A DNA stretch of 62,943 nt, counting the filler, from Basidiobolus meristosporus CBS 931.73 (Eukaryota > Fungi > Basidiobolomycota): NCBI GenBank assembly GCA_002104905.1. It is 4 parts of 4 records of this genome, joined end to end, with 100 filler letters (N's around TTAATTAATTAA, not from the genome) between each part and the next. Parts side by side here need not be neighbours in the genome. Positions count along the whole stretch, not along the records: positions 40,082 to 51,736 come from MCFE01001269.1; 3 more parts are not named here. One strand, given 5' to 3'. Below are positions 19,983 to 51,736 of the stretch, in pieces. A model generated the notes under the pieces. That model made no database searches. It saw only the letters and a list, made by a program, of their open reading frames with translations, and was not told the DNA's origin. The first letter of the stretch is position 1. Each line of letters starts with the position of its first letter. The position numbers were made by a program, and so were the translations under genes.

Positions 19983-20329
19983 TAAGTTGTCAGCTCATAC
20001 CAAAGCATTAATGAGGAAATTAGGTGCAGTGGCAGATAGAATAGATGCAATGGCCAAGCAAAATCTGTATATTGTCTGGACAGGAATACTGGGTAACACA
20101 TGTAGTGCAATCAATATCCCTGGTTGGGAATGTGGTATCTTTGCTGCAAAGAAGGAACTCAAGTAGCGCAAAGCCACCACCAAAAATTTAGCCATTTTCC
20201 AATGTAAATCAGAGGAACACTGTACAGTCTTTGTAGCACAATTACATTGCCCAAAGATAATGCCTAAAGAAAAACATATCACAGCATAGGAGGGAGCAAC
20301 TGTTGAATTTATGCCCAAGCCTAAAAATC

Positions 20330-21960
20330 AAGATCTGTGAAGCTGTTTAGTGCACTAATGAAGAGCAGACTTATGTTCATAGGGTTATTAGAATTCTAGG
20401 TTGGCATTAACTTAAAGCCAATTGACTATGGGACCATAAGGAGCTCAAGGCCAAGTAGAATGTACTTGACCTGTCCCAAGATGATTATTCTGGCCTAAAG
20501 CAAGCAAACAGATTTTCAGCCAGCATTGGAATGCTAAGAAAGTATCTTAGAATAGCAGAAACTATCCAAAGTGGAAGAAAAAAGATGTCATGGCCAAAAA
20601 CCAGCAGCTTCCTCAAGAGCTTGTCACAAGCAAGGCTGCAAGCTCTAAGCATGTGGAAAGAAATGTCAGTTAGGCAGAAGAGTGCCAGTGAGGGACATGC
20701 AGGCAGAAACAAATGCATTGGTGCAGCATTTATCTAGGAGAAAGCAAAGTTCAATAGAATATGCATTCAGTCAAAGTAGCAGTGAAGGACTTGAGAGTGC
20801 TAGAAAATGTCAGCTTGTTGGGAAATTGCAGAAAAGAGACAAGCAAGCAAAAAAAGGTGCACCAGCGCAGTATTCATCAAGGAGAAAACAAAGTACCATA
20901 CAAGAAGCACTCAGTCAAAGTAGTACTGAGCAACATGGCAATGATAAAGGTCATGTTGAAGAGAAAATGTCTAGCTAAGCCAGAGAAAGCTGCAGTTTTC
21001 ACCAGTTAGGACAGTCAGCCCAGAGCAGACCATTTGGCATCATAGCCTGGAAGAACTACCAACAAGAATGCAGCGCTTTTCTCAATAGCTAGACACACTG
21101 CCAGTTGAGCTACACTCCAAGGAGGTAGATGAGTTAACAGAGAAAAGCAATTTGTCTTCCTTTGCTTCTGCATTCTCCATTGTAGACAGAGTGGAAATCT
21201 AATTGACAGACAAAGTAATAATGAAAATAACTCAAAGAACCATCATAGTACCTAGAGCAGAATTTTGCTAAACTAATACACATACCAATAGGTTGCAGAA
21301 CTCCTTCAAGAGCTGTGCACAAGCAAACACACTTGCATATTGCAAGGATATGTTGCAAAGACTGGCAGATGAGGTGCTGCAGTGGTGTATAGGTCCAAGG
21401 GAGAGATACATCCAACACTTCTCAAGTGTTTTGTGTGTGGGTTGTTCACTGGGTGCAATCACCTCTGACAAAAGCTTGCTAGGAATACTTGGGTTCTGTC
21501 TTTAATCTAATGTGAAGGGGAATAAAGCCACAAGCTTGTCAAGGGAAACCTATTGAGCTACAATCCTCAACTTAGTTGGCATCTTAACAAAAGTATGTGC
21601 TGGGTTCAGCGTCCTTTGAGATGACAATGTACTAAAGCTTCCAGAGTCAAAACAACTGTAAACTCCACCAGCAGGGACTTGATAAGAATGCAGCCGTGGT
21701 CAATAGTTACAAAGACAGAAAAGTATCTTTGCCTGTACAATAACAAACTTGGGAAAGAATCAAATATAGTAAAAGATACCTACTCTGAGTATTCCACTTG
21801 AGATCATCCAACCTGTAGGAGTCAAATGCAAGTGTACCAATGGAGTCTGTAAGTAAAAAATGCAAAAAAGAGGTAATGGCCAATCAATGTACAAAAATGC
21901 AGGAAACTATTCAGTGTCCAGGACCAGAAAGTGAGAAATGGCAGTAAACCTATCAAAAGT
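20330..21960 (+). repeat. Unclassified interspersed repeat with K/S/Q-rich coding remnant, interrupted at 21378
   Basis: Homologous to the minus strand of 52250-53396 (NSFKSCAQANTLAYCKDMLQRLADEVL vs HFFKSSAQENALKYCMDLLQRLADKVL). Confidence 0.65.
21378..21793. mobile_element. Truncated copy of the 9374-type solo LTR
   Basis: Nearly identical to 9374-9790. Starts tgcagtggtgtataggtcc after GTGC; the right end is missing. Confidence 0.8.
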
Positions 21961-40081: not shown

Positions 40082-41163
40082 GATGTTGGCTCATGGTAAC
40101 CCGGAATCACCCCCTCCCCAAGTGCAAGGTCACCGGAGTCGAAGATCGCCTCGACCCTACTATCGCATCGATTGTGAATTTCTGTTCCCGATATATATGT
40201 AAATGTGTGTTATTAATTCTCGTGCGTATTCGTACAACGTATATTTTTCTAATTTTCCCGGTCAGCCAACATTCTACGAGAGATACAACAGGAGACGGCT
40301 AGAGATCTCTCCATCACATGTTCCATGTAGCATCCACCTATCCCCTTTCTCCCAACCAGTCTCCGTGTACTTTCTTCCCAACAGACAATAATCTAACCAT
40401 CCACTATATGTATGTGATTCACGAGTGTCGAAACCCCCCATCAAGCGTACAGGGTCCGCGCAGGATGATATCGACCGAATCCAAGGTTCCACCATCCACC
40501 AGGGTGGGAATCCCATTCTTGTGCGCCCAAGTATTCCAACCGATTCTGATTAAAATTATTTTTCTACCTCGACCACGTTCTGACCAATGTCACCATCGCC
40601 CGCACCCATTACCTCCCACACAGAGGACCGGGTGGTGCGGTTCAAAGTGGGAGCCAATAAAAAAAATCGAGATTTACTCAGTATCTACTATCTTTTTTCC
40701 CAGTTATTCTCACCATGAGCGTTAGCTCAATACTGATGTCCCTAACTGAAGTAATCATCATAGTAAATTTCGATTGTGATGGCGGATTCGATCTCCGGAC
40801 TTTTAATCAACGGACGACCGCCTAAGACCGTGAAGACATCTACACGATCTACGAATAGAAAGAAAAATGATTAAAATATTGGATTTGAAATCAAGCACGA
40901 ATAAATTCAATGCCAGTGTCATGTCTTCTGGGAGCACTGTATGGAAAGTGTTGCAATGGAGATTTGGATACATACGCAGCAGATGCGGAGTATATTATGC
41001 GTGTTCAGATCTATGTGCGGCTTCATTTAGATTGGTCTTGACAAAGAATGTAGGTATTTACAAATTCAAGTCTAAGCGCACAGATAGTTCGAGTAAAAAT
41101 ACATCGGTAATCACCCAGGATTTGAAGTAGTAGAAATACACGAAAGTACAGTATCATTAGTGG

Positions 41164-41871
41164 TCAGAAATAGTCGGATAACTCGAGATCCCAATTGGAT
41201 ATAGATTCATCCCAGCAAGACGCCTGATTCTCAAAATCCAATGGTGTTAAAGGCAACTCCTCCAAAAGATTGGGTAACTGTGTATTTGTAGGGAAACACC
41301 AGGATTGGGCTCGAATCTTCTCCACGTGCGAAGTGAATTCTTCCAAGAAAAGCAACCATGTCTGATATTGCTCACAATTCAAAAACAAATCAAAATTGCT
41401 GCTTAGAAAGCGCATCTCTAACTGATTCAACTCCTCTACGGAAATCCCGCTGGCGGTGGACCATGATCGATTGTTGTATGCAACATCCTCGTGGAATTTC
41501 ATGGCCAACATGAAGGCGACAGTGACCAGTTGGCATTCGTCGAATAAATCAGACTCTTCGGGATAGCCTTGGCGATAGCGATGAAGGTACATAAGACCAA
41601 TGATGATGACGGACCATGAGAGCTGTGTACGATGTAACAGGAATTGGCAAAATTGTTTGAAACAGAGTGGAGCGAAGCAAGTAAAAGGGACATCGTTCAT
41701 GTGCCATATGGAATAGCACAAGTCGGCAACCACATCAACCATCTCCGTGTAGTCCATGGTGTCATCCGGATTATTGGCGACCTTGATGGTGTTGGGCCAT
41801 AGTTTGCAGAACGATAAATCATCAACCAAGTGGTCAAATAGCGAATTCGGTAATGAGCCTAATGCATCCAT
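41164..41871 (-). CDS. PHO80/PCL-like cyclin-fold protein, intronless, 235 aa
   Basis: LLHRTQLSWSVIIIGLMYLHRY..VAFMLAMKFHEDVAYNNRSWSTASGISVEELNQLEMRFL fits the Pho80-type cyclin box (LA.KF.DD..Y.N..W...G....ELN.LE..FL). Confidence 0.85.
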   Translation of the reverse strand: MDALGSLPNSLFDHLVDDLSFCKLWPNTIKVANNPDDTMDYTEMVDVVADLCYSIWHMNDVPFTCFAPLCFKQFCQFLLHRTQLSWSVIIIGLMYLHRYRQGYPEESDLFDECQLVTVAFMLAMKFHEDVAYNNRSWSTASGISVEELNQLEMRFLSSNFDLFLNCEQYQTWLLFLEEFTSHVEKIRAQSWCFPTNTQLPNLLEELPLTPLDFENQASCWDESISNWDLELSDYF

Positions 41872-44224
41872 AGTCTAGTGTAAATATGGGTTCATCGAAA
41901 TGTGTGTGAATGTGTAGCAAGATTTGGGAATTTGGGTTGGCTTTTATACGATCCAGGACTGAATTGAATATATTTACAGAACGAGTTAAGGCACATCCAC
42001 CCAGCCATCCTCCGGCTGTGTTACATGCTCTCCCCTCACCCTCAAACTCAATCAGTTCTAAAATAAGCCGATATAAAAAGCAACAGCATCCGCGCAGGAT
42101 GATTGGTCGGAAGCAATAATAACAAAAGAATTAAACTAAATTAGATTGCCATTCGCAGGCATTCACTGGCATTCACTGATTAGATACCAGCCATTCAACG
42201 AGCCATTCAACCAATTTTCAGATCCTTGTCCTCCTTAACCGGACAGGCATAGTCATGTATCGCTTCTATATGGGTCATAGAATACGAATCGATATCTAAT
42301 GATATTCCATACGTGAAAGCCACCTAATCACACAAACCTCACCAAAACTGCCCACTTCGTTCCATGCACGAATCTGCAAGCGGATAATTATTTTCTACAT
42401 TTGCGAAGCTTAGGGGTGGCCAAATCGAAAACGGAAGGCATCAGGTAAATCACAATGTAAAACGATCTCGATCCCGAGTCTCACCTGCCCAATAGGCTCC
42501 ATGGATGAAACCAGAGGTGAGAGATGGGACTTTGGCTGAGTTTTGGCAAATGGAATCCCAGTGGGTGACTGGCCTAGAAGTCGTGGATATTCCACGAGGT
42601 CAGCCCTGGAAGATTTGGCGATGATATGAACTTTATTTATCGATGAATCATCACCAAACATCTCCATTAATTCTCACTCGCCAATTGATTAGAGTTTCAG
42701 CATGTATCCCCCTGATACACGCGAGTTCTGGTGTGCGATGTTGTTATGCACCTTCCTAGTGAAAGGCCAAGCCCAACTCGTCAACCACCAAGTCGTATTT
42801 GGGTGGTGGCATCGCGAAAGGAATTCCCGAAATCATTGCGTTTAGTTTAATTGAATTCCTATTTCCTTAGGAAGGTGCATGATTGTCGTAGGCATTTCTG
42901 GAAATCCCGTTTCATCCTGATGTCAAACGTCCAGCAGATGTGGCATCTTGTATCATTTGCTAACCGTTTGATCACTTCCCTTTGTTCTCACTACCCTGTA
43001 CGATCCGTTTGAAATGCTTGTCAATAAACATGCATCACGTTCAAGCAATATTTTATTCATGCTGAATACATGTTACACATGAACGAATCAGCTCACCATG
43101 TAGATTGCTCGATTCTCGGCCCTGCCCCCACACATTCATCATATGTTGGCACAGGTTTTTCTTTAGATGGGCTCGTGTGACCACTTTAGCTTAATGTAGC
43201 CATGTACCATGTAAAGCTCCCATTCACAAAGATCCCACAAGCATCTATATGGCCCCTTACACAATGCTTAAACTTGGGCCAATGTATGGCATGCTGCATA
43301 CGTACTAATTCCATCATTGACTTATATGAGGTAGCGCCGTATCTAGACATTTAGGAACAGAATCATGCCCTGAATTCTGCTAATCATCGCCACCACCCAC
43401 TCATAGGATGCATAGAGGAAACAGGAGAGTGTTTAATGAGAGTGAGGCACTTATTGCATAATGGAATACGGGCGATGATGTGGGCGACGAGGCATCCTCA
43501 ATAAACGATGTGATGAAGGATGACGGTTGTTGGGCTTTCGGGAGAGAATGCTCAATCGTTAGCACCTTGTCATGTCGGATATCAATATCATGGCCACATC
43601 TTTGATCGACTTTTACTACAGCACCCGTAACTATAGTGGCTGAATAAACCCGCTGTTCTTTATGTATGAGTAGCGGAAGTAGAAATCCCCTGCAAGAGTG
43701 TCGCTAATATTCCCCTGTTTAGAGAGAAGCTTCTATGTTAGCTATCGAGGAGTTAAAGATACCACCGTTTTACCGGAAACGGGTTCAACATGGCGTCTCC
43801 GCACTCGATGTTCAGCTCTCTCACCCACAACAAGGCTCTCTTATCATCAGCGCTACCTGTCAACTCTTGGTGTTTTCACCTTAACAATCCAGTATCATGT
43901 CCTTATGTTTGCTTTGAACTCAGATTGATGGAGAATCAACCCGCATTGCCTCCAACTCGTACCAGAGGGCAACATTGACTGAGTGTTCAACAATGTTTGC
44001 CACCTTGGATACGGTTAAATAGAGCACAATGAAGTATTCTCATTGCTTCGCTAGTAAACAATTTTCATTCAACCCTTGCCTATACAATTAACCCGATTTA
44101 TACGTCAATTTGGTCGGATTCACACATCAGACACAATAAAATAGGGCAAATCCATAGGAAATTCGCTTTTCATTTGACAATATTATGAGGCCAAAAAGCC
44201 GTCAAGGTTATTAAATACATGGGG

Positions 44225-46240
44225 TTAATATTTGTTGATTTTGATGGTGATCTCCTCGCCATTGGATTTTTGGTTGTAGCTCTGATGAGAGGCCTCAGAG
44301 GCATTGTAGCTGTAGGTTCTGCTTTGTTGCTGTTGTCCATAATTGTGACTATACTGGCTAGCATTGCTATTGAAACTTTGTGCGCAGTGGTTGTTGCTGC
44401 TGTTGTGGTTTTGGGTATTGCTATTGCTGCTGCTAGCATAACGGCTTTCATTACTGCTGATGCTTTGGGCATCGCTACTGTTGCAGCTGTTAGCATATTG
44501 CTTCTCTAACTTTTGGGAGTCGCAGGAGTTTGAGTAAACAGATTGCCCATAGGAATGGCTGCTGCTAGTGTAAGCTTTCTGCTGATGACGTTGCTCGTTA
44601 GTGCTCACCTTTTGCGAATAGTTTTGTCCAAATTGCGCTTCAGTAGCACCTGCACCCATAGCGGTGGTTGAAGAAATTCCTCCCGAGACGAGATTAATCA
44701 ATCCATCATAATAATGGGCACCTGACCACTTTTGATGTTGAAGAGTATCCACGCTGTAGTTGCGCTCCTTGCGCTGGATGCCTTCAACGTAAGCCAACAT
44801 TCCTCTGGAGGCAAAGTCACGTGAAAACAGGTCAATGCTCAATGCATCACAATGAAATCCAGCAACAGTGATAAACTGCCAACAGTAGCCACTACGACCC
44901 AGATCCCAAATGAATGAGCCAATCTCACTGTCCGACATTCCACAGGCGTCCCAATTGAAGGATGGTGAGAGGTTGTAGGCAAGCTTGGCATGAGGATACT
45001 TCTTATGAACTCCTTCAGCGAATTGCTTAGCCTCATGCAAGAGAGGTCTTGAAGTTTCCATCCACAAAAGATCGGAATAAGGCGAGTACGCAATTGCACG
45101 GGCAACACTACTCTTTATGCCACCCAAGTACCTGTAGAAACCTTCGGCGGTACGAGGCTTCTCCCAATCAAACTCAATCTCGAAGCCAAGGGATTTGGCC
45201 AAGCGACGAGCATCGGTGTTGGAAAGGTTTTCCACTCCGCAATACCATTTAGTCAAGATCTTTTCCTTTTCGGCGTGGCAAGACTTCTGGATGGCCATTG
45301 CCACCGCTTCAATGTAAGTCTGAATGTTGGCATCTTCCAACCATTGAGCTTCCATGCGGTTGATTTCGATAGGGTTCATACCGGCAACTCGACACTCCTC
45401 CAACACCTCAGCCAATGGACGAAGATGCTTGCAAGTGGTACCAAGAATGAATGGATGGTCACGTTTGTCAATGGTACTGGTGATATAAGAAGCTGCCTCG
45501 GCATCGGTTCTCGAGATAATTAGATTCTCGACTCCCATGATATCAAACTGGGCTCGGACAGCAACCAAACGGTTGATATGTTCCGAAACTGGAACCAGCA
45601 CTTTCCCAGCCATATGGCCACATTTCTTAGTTCCAGGAGCCTGATCCTCCAGGTGGATACCTGCTGCTCCACGTTCCACAAACATCTTCGCCAGCTTCAT
45701 GACCGCGGTGATTCCGCCATGACCCGCATCGGCGTCCGCGATGATTGGACGGAGATAGTCATACTCCTGGGTAGTGGCCCTTAACTTGGCATCCATGTTG
45801 ATTCGATCCTCACGCTGCTTTCTATCGTGGAATTGCTGGGCAAGGAATAGCTGATGCACTTTGTTTGGAACAGTGTCCATTGGGTAGTCAGCAAGGTCTG
45901 GCCCGGGCTCGTTGGAGGTAGAAGCAGTGGAGGAGCTTTGCCATCCAGAGACATATACTGTCTCTAGGTATTTGGACATACAGGTCACCTGAACAGGATC
46001 CAGAGAGCCAAAGGTATGGGATGCGGTGCCATTCTGGAAGTGCTGGTTCACAATCTTCCAAAGTTTTTTGGCCATGGTGTTCGAGGGATATTGGATGTTC
46101 AAGGTTCCCCGCTTGGAAACAATGGATTCAGCAGTGTACGGACGAGTGACATGGGTGAAGCGGGAGTTTCTCCACCAAGCACGCACCTGTTCGCACTCAT
46201 CAGTGAAAAGCCCGGTTTCGTCGAAGTTACGAGTATGCAT
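44225..46240 (-). CDS. ICL1: Isocitrate lyase with a 134-aa low-complexity C-terminal extension (671 aa)
   Basis: Catalytic [55 protein letters not shown]. No intron is needed. Confidence 0.93.
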
Positions 46241-46327
46241 GGTTTCTTACGGCACTCCACTGGCACTGTTATCTCAGAAGGAAAGTAAGGCAGAATAACT
46301 GTCTCCTGTACTGAGCCGATGCTGGCT

Positions 46328-46335
46328 TATTTATA
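46328..46335 (-). promoter_or_regulatory. Probable TATA box of ICL1
   Basis: TATAAATA on the minus strand about 90 bp upstream of the ATG. Confidence 0.5.
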
Positions 46336-48045
46336 CTCTGAGATGAGAAGTTCATCCCGATAGTATACGTAAATGGCGCCTATAGAGTTACATTAGAAAA
46401 TAAGGGACATCAGACCATCATTAATGCATCCCCAAGGCATCCGGATTGGGCTGAGAAGAAAGATTTGACTTAATACGGTCGAGCACACTGGCGAATCCTA
46501 GTGGTGGTATTATGGACTAGTGGACTAAGCCATCCACCATCCCCTTGGAAACCGGAGTGGATCGAGATCAATACTGTGAAACAGAGATCCAGTTTTCGAA
46601 GCCACCTACCAGACACGTGATCCATTGTTAAGGTGCTGATGTGCTGATGTGGCAAGTACAGATATGATATTTTCCTAACGGCTCAAGAGCATTTAAGCAG
46701 CTGAGGAACACGTCGAAACCCTCCTGGAGCAGCATCCTCCATCATTTCGAATTATCACCTCATCGGACCCCTTTCAAGCGATCAACAGAAATAAAGTGGA
46801 AATGACTCAGTCTGTGTTCTACACGATAATGGGAATAGCTGAACAATTTATGATGATTTGAATGTATTGTATACAGTGATAACAGTGATAAAGTAGATAT
46901 CTCTATTGCAAATTAAGAAGGGACCAGGAAGCCAACAAAACATTGGTCCAACAGGATATCAGTGCTAACCCACGAATGGACATTCACTATGAATATCCAC
47001 GATATTAGTGAAATCTCGAGAATGACAAGAACCAGCACAATGAACACTTACTAAATAACTTTGTGGCATCTCTACCGGCCGCTCGCATCAGTTCCTTTTT
47101 CCCTACAATGGTCGGTTGTTGAGTTATCGGTATTTGGAGACACTTCTGTAACACCTACCTCCAGGATGAAAGTTTAGATATGCTGTCAAGTTGTACACCT
47201 TTCCTTGAATAGCGCACCAGGCATCGGTCTCGCTTTTGTGTTTCTTAAGGTCTTCTAGTGTGTATTTTCCAATGCAAGGAACCCCCTATTCCAATCATCA
47301 TCAGTACGCCATTATTGAAAAATCCCGATGGAATATTACTGTACTCTCAAGTCGGCACCCGAGTTTTTAAGTTTGGCCCAGTCCAAGGGTGAATGGCCTG
47401 GTTCCAGTGCAACTTTCACACGCCTGGGTTTCTTTTTGGTCTGTAATGGAGCTACCATCTGGGGCCCATTGGGAAGGGGGAATATGGATGTATCCTTATC
47501 CTCTGCTTAACCGCAATCAGTCGAGCGAACAGTAAGGCTTGGCGTATCAAAGTTACCTTCTTGTGTAGACAACGAAAACTTAATGCTAGGGGCAGCAAAC
47601 TCCGAGGAATCCATAACTTCACCAACTCACTTCTGTAATACTATCTCTGGAAGTCCCAGCAACCAATATATAGAGGGGTATTCCAATTTATTACTAATCT
47701 TCCAGCCCTCCTTACACAATGGAAGAGTCACATGAGCCAGGTCGATGTAATTTCTTGATTAGAACAGTAAACCAATCTACGTGACTTCGAACTTGGTCTT
47801 AGGAAAAAAAGAAAAAAATTCCAAATTGGCGATCGGTCGAAATCTTTTTTTTTCAAATCGGACTTGTGGATTTCGTGCCAAGTGGTTAAAGACAAGAGTA
47901 ACTGGGTAGTTCCGATTTGGAGTATCTTTCGAGGTTCCTTATACCTAACAACCTTCCTTTACGAACTTGACTGGAATATCTCCTCCCCATTCAGTACCTT
48001 ATATCACCGCATAGTTCATTTCTGTTTCTCTGATAATATAATAAG

Positions 48046-50618
48046 ATGGCTGCCGACTTTGTTATGACCATTGATGAGGAGGACGTCGTTCCTCTATTGG
48101 ACGAAGAGGAGACAATGGAGACACAAGAAGTAACCCAATTCGTTCAGTACTTGCTTCCTGAAATAGATAAATAACCCATTCTGTGGTGAATATTAGACAA
48201 CTAAAAAGAAGAATTACAAGAAGAAACAAAAGAAAGATGAAGATGCCATTAACCCAGGATTCAGATTCGATTTGGCTGGTGATTCGGTCAACAGCATCAT
48301 ACATACCCTGGATTTTACCGCTGCTAAAGCGGCTCTCAAAAAGAGAGACCACGTATGTCGCCTAGCTTCTCGATACTTCCTCTCTTCGTTCTCCAACTAA
48401 CATATTTTCTCCATACAGACCGCTAGTTACACGAGTCTAGATGAAAAAATCGCAAACAAGCGTCTTCAAATGAAGAGCAAAAAGAAATCTGCAGAGGAAG
48501 CTGAGCCAGAAGGTAACCGATATTACGATGATAGAAATAGCCCATCAGATATTAATATGTATTGGCTAAACCCAGATTCCGAAGACGATGGCTTGGATGC
48601 TGATAGTTCTTTCTTCATGGATGAAGATGACGATGAAGAGGAGGAGGATGTGCAGGAAGAGGACGAGGAGGAGGTAGAAATGGACGAAGAGGAAGATGCC
48701 GAAGAAAGCAACGATGATGAGGAAGATAGCGAGGAAGAGGAGGAGGAAGAGGAGATCGAAGAAGAGGAGGCTGATGACAGTGAAAGTGAAGACGAATATG
48801 AGAAGAGAGTAAGCCAGAACTATATAGCCTACACAAAGACGGACCTGAATGCTTAACACATTTTGATTAGCGTAAGGCAGCATACTTTGCCGCTCCTGAA
48901 GAGACCACAAGTGATGTGCCCGAATCCTTTGCCGGCATGAATCTATCGAGACCCATCATGAAGGGTCTCAGCAACATCGGGTTTGTCAAGCCCACACCCA
49001 TCCAGGCAAAGACCATTCCAATTGCTTTGCTTGGCAAGGATATTTGTGGTGGTGCAGTTACTGGCTCAGGTTAGCAATCCAAGCAAGATCTTCCAATTGA
49101 AGGCCGACTAACTTGAATTTAGGTAAAACCGGTGCTTTCATCGTCCCTATCCTCGAGCGTCTTCTCTACCGTCCTCGCCAAAATGCCGCCATTCGTGTGC
49201 TTATCCTCTGCCCTACTCGTGAGTTGGCCATCCAGTGTCACAGTGTTGGTACCAAACTCGCACAGTTCACCGATATCGATTTCTGCTTGTGCATTGGTGG
49301 GCTTTCGCTCAAAGTCCAAGAGATGGCCCTCAAGCAGCGCCCTGACGTTGTCATTGCCACTCCAGGTCGTTTGATTGATCACATCCACAACTCCCCCTCC
49401 TTTACCTTGGATCAGATTGAAATTCTTATTATGGACGAAGCTGACAGAATGCTGGAAGATGGTTTCACAGCCGAATTGACTGAGATCGTCAAAAACTGTC
49501 CCAAGTCCAGACAGACCATGCTCTTTTCCGCCACCATGACCGACAACGTCGATGAATTGATTAGATTGTCGCTCAACAAGCCAGTCAGATTGATGATTGA
49601 TTCGCCCAAATCCACAGCCGATAACTTGATCCAAGAGTTTGTCAGAGTTAGACAGCATCGCGAGGCTGATCGCTCGGCCATGCTTGCATCTCTTTGTAAG
49701 AAATACTTCAAAAAGAAGTGCATCATCTTCTTCAGAAGCAAGGCTTCCGCTCATCAGATGAAGATCATTTTCGGTTTGCTCGGCCTCAGAGCAGCTGAGC
49801 TTCACGGTAACTTGACCCAGGAGCAACGTCTCGAGGCTTTGGAGCAATTCCGTGATGAGAAAGTAGATTACCTTCTGGCTACGGACTTGGCGTCCCGTGG
49901 TCTCGATATCAAAGGAATCGAGACCGTCATCAATTTCAACATGCCTACCAGCTTTGCGCAATACCAGCATCGTGTTGGTCGTACTGCTCGTGCCGGGCGT
50001 AGCGGTAGATCGGTGACTCTTGTTGGCGAGGCGGATCGGAAAATGCTTCGCTTGGCTATCAAGCACTCGTCCAAAGAGAAAATCAAGAACCGCGTGTTGG
50101 GTCAAGAGTTGGTTCAGAAGTACAAGGAGAAGATCGACGGCTTGACCGAACAGGTGAAGGAGATCATGAAGGAAGAGAAGGACGAGAAGATGTTCCGCCA
50201 AGCGGAAATGGAAGTCACCAAAGCTCAAAACCTCATTGATCATGAGAAGGAGATTTACAGCCGCCCAGCAAGAACATGGTTCCAGTCGGAAAAGGAGCGT
50301 CAGAAGTCGAAGGATGTCGCTCTTGCTTCACATAATGCCAAATTCGAGCCCAAGAAGGTTCCCAACAGCAAGAAGAGACGTATGAAGTCTTCCGAAGACG
50401 TTCAGGTTGAAAATCAGCAAAAGAGATCGATCAGGGCAGCCAAGAAGGCGCTGCAACCCAAGAAGATCAACACTGTGATTGAGCGCAACGCCTCTGCAGC
50501 AGGCCCAGCAAAGAAGAAGCAGAAGAAGAACAGATCCTTTGCATCGGACTTGGCTGATGGCAGCAAGCGTAACGCTGGACCCAAACTCACCAGCAAGAAC
50601 AAGAAAGGAAGAAAATGA
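48046..50618 (+). CDS. DRS1: DEAD-box RNA helicase DRS1/DDX27; exons 48046-48129, 48197-48352, 48419-48512, 48576-48808, 48871-49069, 49123-50618
   Basis: Starts [12 protein letters not shown]; acidic N-terminal tract; Q motif [10 protein letters not shown]; GAVTGSGKT assembled across a GT-AG intron; [23 protein letters not shown]; C-terminal [15 protein letters not shown]. All five introns are GT-AG, 53-67 nt, and keep phase. Confidence 0.9.
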
Positions 50619-50745
50619 ACGCTTGCGCATTAATCATTAATTCGAATCACCCACTTCCCATCCACTGTTTCTTTTACTTTTCTTAGATAGTGTTATATAG
50701 ACTTGATACATAATTATTAAAAATCAGGACATGATTCAAACATGG

Positions 50746-51639
50746 TTATACAGCAGTGTGATGGCTCCGGGTTAAGCCCTTAACAACCGTATTAGTATGA
50801 CTGCTCTGTTGTGCCTCTGAAGCGAACTCTAACCTCTCCAACGCTTCCATTGCAATCAAGACGTCGTGCTTATTGCTGCTCACGATGTTCCCGTTGGCCA
50901 TCATTTCATTCAGGATCATATGGACCTTATCCAATTGGATCACTATGTAACCTGGTGTCAAGGAGGTGAAATATGCACGCTTGTTGAAAGGAAGAGGAAG
51001 AGTAAGGGCAAGGGCAGGAAAAAGATATATCAAGTTCACGCTGGTTTTTCAAAGGCAAATCGCGTAAACATCAGTGGTCTTGTCGAAGTGAAATCCCCAG
51101 TGAACTCACCACTTTGTCAAAGTAGACATTCAAGATTTCTGTTGGACAGCAGGGCTCAGAAGTTGAATGCAGGGAGGAGATAAAGCAGAGGACCACATAC
51201 CCACCCAGTTCTGCACGAACTCTATCACCTCGAACTCGTTCTAAACGAAGCTAGTCAATATCAGCTGTCTTTCCGCAAAATACCAGGAATCGTAACCACA
51301 TCTTCAGGCGATATCCCCAGGATGAAGAAAAGTCCAGCATATCTTCGATAGACTGCAGCAACATTTAGTTGGGCCACCGCGCACTCTGCATTTTACAACA
51401 TCCTTTTACCAAATTTGTATTGTTCGTGAAATATGATGGAGCACTAGGCGTAGATACTATCAGCAATTTGCTCCATAAGAACGGTGAAGTACTAACTTGA
51501 CTCTCAGTCCTTGGTATGATCTTTCGTGCCAACTCAGCCTCAAAAATCGACCGCTGCAAAGGTGACACCCCAATATCAGTGAAGTACTTGGAGAAGCGAG
51601 TCCTTCTTGCTTGTTGATAATGAGTATAAAGTGTATCAT
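50746..51639 (-). CDS. Adaptor complex sigma subunit, AP-4 sigma-like (about 170 aa); exons 51639-51497, 51443-51410, 51352-51300, 51240-51201, 51138-51110, 51040-51029, 50946-50746; apparent 1-nt deletion near 51605
   Basis: Spliced product: MIHFILIINKQ(fs)RTRFSKYF..QRSIFEAELARKIIPRTESQCSIIFHEQYKFVYRRYAGLFFILGISPEDNEFEVIEFVQNWVEILNVYFDKVRELDIVIQLDKVHMILNEMMANGNIVSSN. Sigma-adaptin family is clear; AP-4 assignment is from recalled AP4S1 motifs (QCS, N.VE.L..YF..V.ELDI...LDKVH.IL.EM..NG.IV..N). Confidence 0.8.
50947..51028 (-). other. U12-type (minor spliceosome) AT-AC intron, 82 nt
   Basis: 5' ATATCTTTTT; branch CTCCTTGAC at 50965-50957; 3' TTAC at 50950-50947. Removal joins RELD to IVIQLDKVH in frame. 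Confidence 0.85.
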
Positions 51640-51736
51640 TCTGCGATAAATCCTTGGAAAGCAGCATGACCGTCCATTGATCCATAAATGATCAAGATTG
51701 GTGCTTAATCAAGCATAATTAGGTTTTGGTATACAT

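What the first reader, a model, noticed from the sequence alone, without database searches (positions are those of the whole stretch)
50947..51028. U12-type AT-AC intron in a fungal adaptin sigma gene
After RELD there is no GT donor, and the frame must shift by one to reach LDKVH. The intervening 82 nt start ATATCTTTT (U12 consensus RTATCCTT, one mismatch), contain CTCCTTGAC (consensus TTCCTTRAC) with the branch A 11 nt from the end, and finish in AC. Excision gives RELD-IVIQ-LDKVH, the same spacing as ELD-IMFN-LDKVH in AP4S1. Dikarya have largely lost the minor spliceosome, which is retained in some early-diverging fungi. Standard GT-AG gene callers would mis-model this gene.
Basis: partly seen in the sequence, partly recalled or inferred. 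Interest (0 to 1): 0.8.

Follow-up and report, generated by a model that had tools for sequence, protein, structure and literature searches.

The report
Minor-spliceosome intron in fungal adaptin gene
The 82-base stretch is almost certainly a real U12-type (AT-AC) intron in the unannotated AP-4 sigma adaptin gene of Basidiobolus meristosporus, but that fungus is already known to be rich in such introns, so it is a correct but fairly ordinary find.

Summary
The piece is the whole contig MCFE01001269.1 of Basidiobolus meristosporus CBS 931.73 (Zoopagomycota). Its minus strand carries an 8-exon AP-4 sigma gene that NCBI's annotation does not call.

- **The intron:** 51028..50947 begins ATATCTTTT and contains CTCCTTGAC with its branch A 11 nt from the end. 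It ends in AC and follows a 12-nt microexon (RELD).
- **Conservation:** in B. ranarum the orthologous intron is scrambled except for ATATCCTTT (exact U12 consensus), CTCCTTGAC, the 11-nt spacing and the terminal AC. Synonymous sites between the two species are saturated.
- **Public record:** the GenBank protein KAK9719602.1 of B. ranarum is reproduced only by splicing at this AT-AC junction. Its "variant 2" retains the intron.
- **Reading frame:** the frame set by the junction is under strong purifying selection.
- **Older history:** the intron position, and in Phytophthora the same microexon, occurs elsewhere as GT-AG.

Published surveys already report about 240-250 minor introns and minor snRNAs in B. 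meristosporus. This is therefore a new member of a known kind.

The exon-1 frameshift in the piece is one of four single-base deletions near the contig end. It is absent from the main contig, where the intron is 83 nt. RNA reads could not be obtained.

The parts
50772..51639 (-). AP-4 complex sigma subunit gene (ATG 51639-51637 to stop 50774-50772), 8 exons and 7 introns; not annotated in the B. meristosporus assembly
   Evidence: Exon model checked. The same model on the main contig gives a 143-aa product, about 93% identical to B. ranarum KAK9719602.1. No gene is called here.
51497..51639 (-). Exon 1. In this piece it carries a 1-base deletion at about 51607 (CAAGGAAGG on the main contig, CAAGAAGG here), which splits MIHFILIINKQ from RRTRFSKYF..
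   Evidence: The deletion is one of four single-base deletions, all within 713 nt of the contig end.
51444..51496 (-). Intron 1, GT-AG (GTTAGT..TAG), with a conserved GCTGATAGT branch region
51410..51443 (-). Exon 2
51353..51409 (-). Intron 2, GT-AG
51300..51352 (-). Exon 3
51241..51299 (-). Intron 3, GT-AG
51201..51240 (-). Exon 4
51139..51200 (-). Intron 4, GT-AG (GTATGT..CAG)
51110..51138 (-). Exon 5 (..EILNVYFDKV)
51041..51109 (-). Intron 5, U2-type GT-AG (GTGAGT..CCAG)
   Evidence: Its acceptor is used in both B. ranarum GenBank isoforms.
51029..51040 (-). Exon 6, a 12-nt microexon CGTGAACTTGAT (RELD). ELD is invariant in 13 AP-4 sigma homologues.
   Evidence: Phytophthora cactorum has the same 12-nt microexon (CELD).
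50947..51028 (-). Intron 6, the finding: a U12-type AT-AC intron, phase 0; 82 nt here and 83 nt on the main contig
51020..51028 (-). U12-type 5' splice site ATATCTTTT (B. ranarum: ATATCCTTT)
50957..50965 (-). U12-type branch-point box CTCCTTGAC, branch A at 50958, 11 nt before the 3' end. It is identical and equally spaced in B. ranarum.
50834..50946 (-). Exon 7 (IVIQLDKVHMILNEMMANGNIVSSNKHDVLIAMEALE..)
   Evidence: In this frame pS is 0.905 against pN 0.078; the other two frames are full of stops.
50779..50833 (-). Intron 7, probable GT-AG (GTTAGA..TACTAAT..TTAAG), inferred from the annotated B. ranarum intron
50772..50778 (-). Exon 8 (completes Arg, then Ala, then stop TAA)

Best explanation
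Window 51028..50947 (minus strand) is a U12-type AT-AC intron of the AP-4 sigma adaptin gene of Basidiobolus meristosporus. Shown here: the sequence signals, their conservation in a second species, the reading-frame requirement, and use of the junction in a public CDS of the sister species. Inferred: the U11/U12 di-snRNP recognises ATATCTTTT and TCCTTGAC, with a bulged branch A 11 nt from the 3' AC. U4atac/U6atac.U5 then catalyse removal, joining the 12-nt microexon RELD to IVIQLDKVH. The upstream GT-AG intron is taken out by the major spliceosome, probably first, because a B. ranarum isoform has intron 5 removed and intron 6 retained.
For: 1. Signals: ATATCTTTT, CTCCTTGAC 11 nt from a terminal AC, and no pyrimidine tract in between. 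The joint pattern is unique, against 0.00 expected by chance in 22 kb.
2. B. ranarum ortholog: synonymous sites are saturated (pS 0.88, pN 0.03) and the intron interior is scrambled with indels. Even so, ATATCCTTT (perfect consensus), CTCCTTGAC, the 11-nt spacing and the AC are all kept.
3. Public record: GenBank KAK9719602.1 (P0004) is reproduced exactly only with this AT-AC intron. Variant 2, KAK9719603.1 (P0003), is the intron-retained form.
4. Product: splicing restores the invariant ELD and the family's spacing to LDKVH. The exon 7 frame is under purifying selection and the other frames contain stops.
5. Contrast within the gene: the other six introns are GT-AG with CTRAY-like branch boxes.
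6. Literature: B. meristosporus has 249 (or 237) minor introns. U11, U12 and U6atac were found at high confidence and a putative divergent U4atac at a lowered threshold (PMC10639083; PMC11347168).
Against: The 5' splice site has T instead of C at position +6 in B. meristosporus. No formal intronIC or PWM score was computed. The minor snRNAs were not seen by me: none lies in the 54 kb of Basidiobolus sequence available. Whether the B. ranarum model rests on transcripts is my inference from its isoform naming. An in-frame canonical alternative exists in B. meristosporus.
Confidence: 0.9

Rival explanations
1. The gene is spliced only by the major spliceosome, using one long canonical intron GTGAGT (51109) .. 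AACAAG (50980). This skips the RELD microexon and reads the last 33 nt of the 'AT-AC intron' as coding sequence (..FDKV-RAYFTSLTPGY-IVIQLDKVH).
For:: on the main contig this single GT-AG intron keeps the frame open and has a strong donor. It is what a GT-AG-only gene caller could produce.
Against: It deletes ELD, which is invariant in all 13 homologues aligned, and inserts 11 unconserved residues. In B. ranarum the equivalent read-through meets an in-frame TGA 9 nt before exon 7 (sequence). Both GenBank isoforms there include RELD. It does not explain the conserved ATATCYTTT and CTCCTTGAC.
Confidence: 0.04
2. The copy in this piece is a dead allele or pseudogene, given the frameshift in exon 1, so the intron-like stretch has no function here.
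For: Exon 1 of the piece is frameshifted at about 51607. The piece is a second, slightly different copy: 19 substitutions and one retrotransposon insertion difference from the main contig.
Against: All four indels are single-base deletions, at least three in short homopolymer runs, clustered in the last 713 nt of the contig. The other 10 kb has none, which is typical of contig-end assembly error. The main contig copy is intact and otherwise identical over the gene. Splice signals are unaffected either way.
Confidence: 0.1
3. It is an AT-AC intron removed by the major (U2-type) spliceosome rather than the minor one.
For: A small class of AT-AC introns is U2-dependent (established knowledge). 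No experiment here assigns the spliceosome.
Against: U2-type AT-AC introns lack the ATATCC 5' box and the TCCTTRAC branch box close to the 3' end. Both are present here and conserved across species, whereas no CTRAY box or pyrimidine tract is conserved.
Confidence: 0.03

Closest known systems
The published minor (U12-type) intron complement of Basidiobolus meristosporus (Larue and Roy 2023, PMC10639083; Olthof et al. 2024, PMC11347168)
   Same: Same genome and the same kind of intron. The consensus boxes are those described for animals, plants and Rhizophagus. The surveys report minor snRNAs in this species.
   Different: Those surveys score annotated introns only. This gene has no model in the B. 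meristosporus annotation, so this intron is very probably not among the 249 or 237 counted. I could not check their lists.
AP-4 complex subunit sigma-1 of Basidiobolus ranarum (KAK9719602.1, with variant 2 KAK9719603.1; GCA_040143965.1)
   Same: Syntenic ortholog, about 93% identical in protein, with identical exon lengths. It has an AT-AC intron at the same site with the same branch box and spacing.
   Different: The intron is 72 nt rather than 82/83 nt, and its 5' splice site is the perfect consensus ATATCCTTT. The gene is annotated there but not in B. meristosporus.
AP-4 sigma genes of Phytophthora cactorum (L005) and of two unidentified eukaryotes (L010/L011, L092)
   Same: An intron sits at exactly the same place (after ELD, phase 0). 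Phytophthora also has the same 12-nt microexon with an intron on each side.
   Different: Those introns are U2-type GT-AG (GTAAGT.., GTCAGA..). A Triparma-like stramenopile has its intron 6 nt further upstream.

Membership tests
U12-type (minor spliceosomal) intron | 5' splice site box /RTATCCTT | tested here: met
   ATATCTTT in B. meristosporus (7 of 8, C to T at +6) and ATATCCTT in B. ranarum (8 of 8).
U12-type (minor spliceosomal) intron | Branch-point box TCCTTRAC about 10-15 nt from the 3' splice site, with no pyrimidine tract after it | tested here: met
   TCCTTGAC with its branch A 11 nt from the end in both species, followed by CACCAGGTTAC and CTTGAATCTAC respectively.
U12-type (minor spliceosomal) intron | AT-AC (or GT-AG) termini that give the correct reading frame | tested here: met
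   AT..AC. Excision gives RELD|IVIQLDKVH, matching the family alignment. No canonical model keeps both ELD and LDKVH without a 29-38-nt GC-AG mini-intron and a long insertion.
U12-type (minor spliceosomal) intron | Junction present in RNA | tested here: inconclusive
   Reads were unobtainable. Indirect support: the B. ranarum GenBank CDS uses the junction and a second isoform retains the intron.
U12-type (minor spliceosomal) intron | Host genome encodes U11, U12, U4atac and U6atac plus minor-specific proteins | not testable with these tools
   No fungal genome collection was searchable. There are no snRNA hits in the 54 kb in hand. The literature reports U11, U12, U6atac and a divergent U4atac in this species.
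U12-type (minor spliceosomal) intron | Formal classifier score (intronIC or PWM log-odds) | not tested
   The classifier and its matrices are not available here.
AP-4 adaptor complex sigma subunit (Pfam PF01217 Clat_adaptor_s) | Sequence match to the small-chain family, closest to sigma-4 | tested here: met
   Exon 7 matches PF01217 with E 1.5e-4 (22.2 bits against a 22.5 cut-off for this fragment). Its best PDB hit is human AP-4 sigma-1. The ortholog P0004 carries PF01217 and finds AP-4 sigma proteins at 1e-35. The joined B. meristosporus protein itself was not searched.

The most novel reading that the evidence does not exclude
The intron is an ancestral, pre-fungal U12-type intron. It has survived as U12 only in Basidiobolus and was converted to U2-type in oomycetes and other lineages. 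It abuts an equally ancient 12-nt microexon, so a major-spliceosome 3' site and a minor-spliceosome 5' site sit 12 nt apart. That would be a natural test case for cross-spliceosome exon definition and ordered intron removal.
Probability: 0.35. Interest if true: 0.45.

Novelty: new member of a known kind. Interest (0 to 1): 0.25.

Why it matters
It adds one well-supported U12 intron, and a missing AP-4 sigma gene model, to the fungus already known to have the most minor introns. It shows concretely that annotation-based surveys undercount such introns, because the host gene was simply not called. It also shows that the ELD microexon of AP-4 sigma is easily mis-modelled, as in the Phytophthora cactorum protein. 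The shared intron position with GT-AG in other lineages gives a clean example for studying U12-to-U2 conversion. None of this changes current understanding.

Tried and rejected
- **Exon 7 word search:** it found nothing. The B. ranarum protein is hidden under a 110-aa cluster representative that lacks exon 7, and a protein of 170 aa or more would exceed the length filter.
- **Rfam:** nothing relevant on the piece, and no snRNA on 54 kb of Basidiobolus loci.
- **Literature:** searches linking AP4S1 or AT2G19790 to U12 introns found nothing usable. The supplements of the two surveys held no gene lists.
- **Metagenome scan:** 80 loci came back, almost all intronless or transcript-like. No further intron at the ELD site beyond L010/L011.
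- **GT-AG-only reconstruction:** my first such reconstruction of the 143-aa B. ranarum model was wrong. The real protein needs the AT-AC intron.
- **Joined protein:** the joined spliced B. meristosporus protein was computed only inside scripts from references, to check frames. Searches went exon by exon or through the GenBank ortholog.
- **Human DNA:** none was fetched. The comparison with human AP4S1 is by the PDB protein hit only.

Full report
**What the piece is.** The ORFs for isocitrate lyase and a cyclin in the piece are found exactly in NCBI assembly GCA_002104905.1. The piece (window 40082-51736) is the whole 11,655-nt contig MCFE01001269.1. A neighbouring protein on the sister contig is named Basidiobolus meristosporus CBS 931.73. 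A second copy of the neighbourhood lies on the 195.7-kb contig MCFE01000053.1 (L001).

Over 10.9 kb the two copies differ by 19 substitutions and 4 single-base deletions in the piece. All four deletions fall within 713 nt of the piece's end. The copies also differ by a 5.4-kb Ty3-type LTR retrotransposon, which is present only on the large contig.

**The gene.** The minus strand from 51639 to 50772 holds an AP-4 sigma adaptin gene. My model has eight exons of 143(+1), 34, 53, 40, 29, 12, 113 and 7 nt.

- Exon 7 matches Pfam Clat_adaptor_s, and its best solved-structure hit is human AP-4 sigma-1.
- In the piece, exon 1 is frameshifted: MIHFILIINKQ and RRTRFSKYF lie in different frames.
- On the large contig an extra G (CAAGGAAGG) restores MIHFILIINKQGRTRFSKYF. 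The frameshift is therefore most likely a contig-end error, or less likely a null allele.
- NCBI's annotation calls no gene at this locus on either contig.

**The observation.** After the 12-nt exon CGTGAACTTGAT (RELD, 51040-51029) there is no GT or GC donor.

- The next 82 nt start ATATCTTTT and contain CTCCTTGAC (50965-50957) with its A 11 nt from the end.
- They finish in AC at 50947, with no pyrimidine tract after the box.
- The next exon reads IVIQLDKVH.
- On the large contig the T-run after ATATC is one base longer, giving 83 nt. This lies inside the intron and does not move either boundary.
- The joint pattern occurs once in 22 kb, against 0.00 expected in shuffles. The two boxes on their own are not rare.

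**Comparative test.** The syntenic ortholog in Basidiobolus ranarum (L004 5417-6305, minus strand) has exons of identical length.

- The protein is about 93% identical while the CDS is only 79% identical. pS is 0.88 (saturated) against pN 0.03.
- At that divergence the introns are essentially scrambled. Even so, intron 6 keeps ATATCCTTT (the exact U12 consensus), CTCCTTGAC, the 11-nt distance and the terminal AC. Its interior has several indels and its length is 72 nt.
- The other six introns are GT-AG, and their conserved internal blocks are CTRAY-like, for example GCTGATAGT in intron 1.
- In the frame set by the AT-AC junction, exon 7 has pS 0.905 against pN 0.078. The other two frames carry 3-9 stops.

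**Public annotation of the ortholog.** GenBank KAK9719602.1 (P0004, 143 aa, 'AP-4 complex subunit sigma-1') reads ..FDKVRELDLVIHLDKVH... It is reproduced exactly by five GT-AG introns, the AT-AC intron (L004 5666-5595) and one more GT-AG intron near the 3' end.

'Variant 2' (KAK9719603.1, P0003, 110 aa) ends ..RELDISFLSF. That is intron 5 removed and the AT-AC intron retained. I infer, but cannot show, that these isoforms come from transcript alignments. If so, they also suggest that the U2-type intron upstream is removed before the U12-type one.

The equivalent 3' intron in B. meristosporus (50833-50779, GTTAGA..TACTAAT..TTAAG) gives the same ending..ERA plus stop.

**Alternatives.** On the large contig one canonical intron (GTGAGT..AACAAG; 51109..50980 in the window) keeps the frame. 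It replaces the invariant ELD with 11 unrelated residues. The corresponding read-through in B. ranarum hits a TGA. The only canonical models that keep both ELD and LDKVH need a 29-38-nt GC-AG mini-intron and a 16-17-residue insertion.

**Age of the position.**

- In Phytophthora cactorum the same 12-nt microexon (TGCGAGCTCGAC, CELD; L005 2030-2041) is flanked by GT-AG introns at 1935-2029 and 2042-2129. The deposited protein misses it and reads VRKDKLHVRDAV instead.
- Two unidentified eukaryotes have GT-AG introns directly after CELD (L010/L011; L092).
- A Triparma-like stramenopile has an intron 6 nt upstream.
- Pavlovales and many picoeukaryote genes have no intron there.

The position is therefore old. 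So far the U12 type is seen only in Basidiobolus, and whether U12 is the ancestral state remains open.

**What is known.** Larue and Roy (PMC10639083) report 249 minor introns (0.554%) in B. meristosporus, the highest density in fungi, and none in Dikarya. Olthof et al. (PMC11347168) report 237 minor introns. They found U11, U12 and U6atac at high confidence, and a putative divergent U4atac at a lowered threshold. A U12 intron in this genome is therefore expected.

What is new is this particular intron in an uncalled gene, next to a conserved microexon.

**Limits.**

- No snRNA genes lie in the 54 kb available.
- No formal U12 classifier was run.
- The joined B. meristosporus protein was used only inside scripts and was not searched.

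**Verdict.** This is a new member of a known kind, of modest interest.

Noticed in passing
window 51607, 51480, 51449, 51024: Relative to the main contig MCFE01000053.1, the piece has four single-base deletions, at least three in short homopolymer runs, all near its end. One of them frameshifts exon 1 of the sigma gene. The rest of the 10.9-kb overlap has 19 substitutions and no indels, so the piece looks like a second haplotype or duplicate with a poorly polished end.
   Followed up: partly
L001 15389-20766 (junction at about window 40857): A 5.4-kb Ty3/gypsy LTR retrotransposon is present on the large contig and absent from the piece. It has identical 300-nt LTRs, a gag ORF of 323 aa and a pol ORF of 1128 aa with protease, RT, RNase H and integrase domains. 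It looks like a recent insertion polymorphism. A 20-nt tandem repeat array lies at 20202-20429.
   Followed up: yes
L005 1935-2129 (Phytophthora cactorum WXXK01002537.1): The deposited AP-4 sigma model (152 aa) misses the 12-nt CELD microexon and translates 36 nt of intron instead. The corrected model would be 144 aa.
   Followed up: yes
window 44225-46240 (-): The isocitrate lyase ORF of 671 aa has a C-terminal tail of roughly 130 aa rich in Ser, Asn and Gln, which is unusual for ICL. The B. ranarum ortholog is 720 aa.
   Followed up: no
window 40665-40769 (-): Three overlapping sub-threshold Rfam hits to C/D-box snoRNA families (24-25 bits, E 0.3-0.75). This may be an unannotated snoRNA.
   Followed up: no
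window 48470-48856 (+): An ORF of 128 aa that is extremely rich in Asp and Glu lies upstream of the DEAD-box helicase gene. It may be the helicase's N-terminal exon: the annotated helicase product has 648 aa, against 501 aa in the single ORF.
   Followed up: no
L093 360-455: In a Triparma-like stramenopile metagenome contig the AP-4 sigma intron lies between E and L of CELD. That is 6 nt upstream of the position used in Basidiobolus, Phytophthora, L010 and L092.
   Followed up: partly
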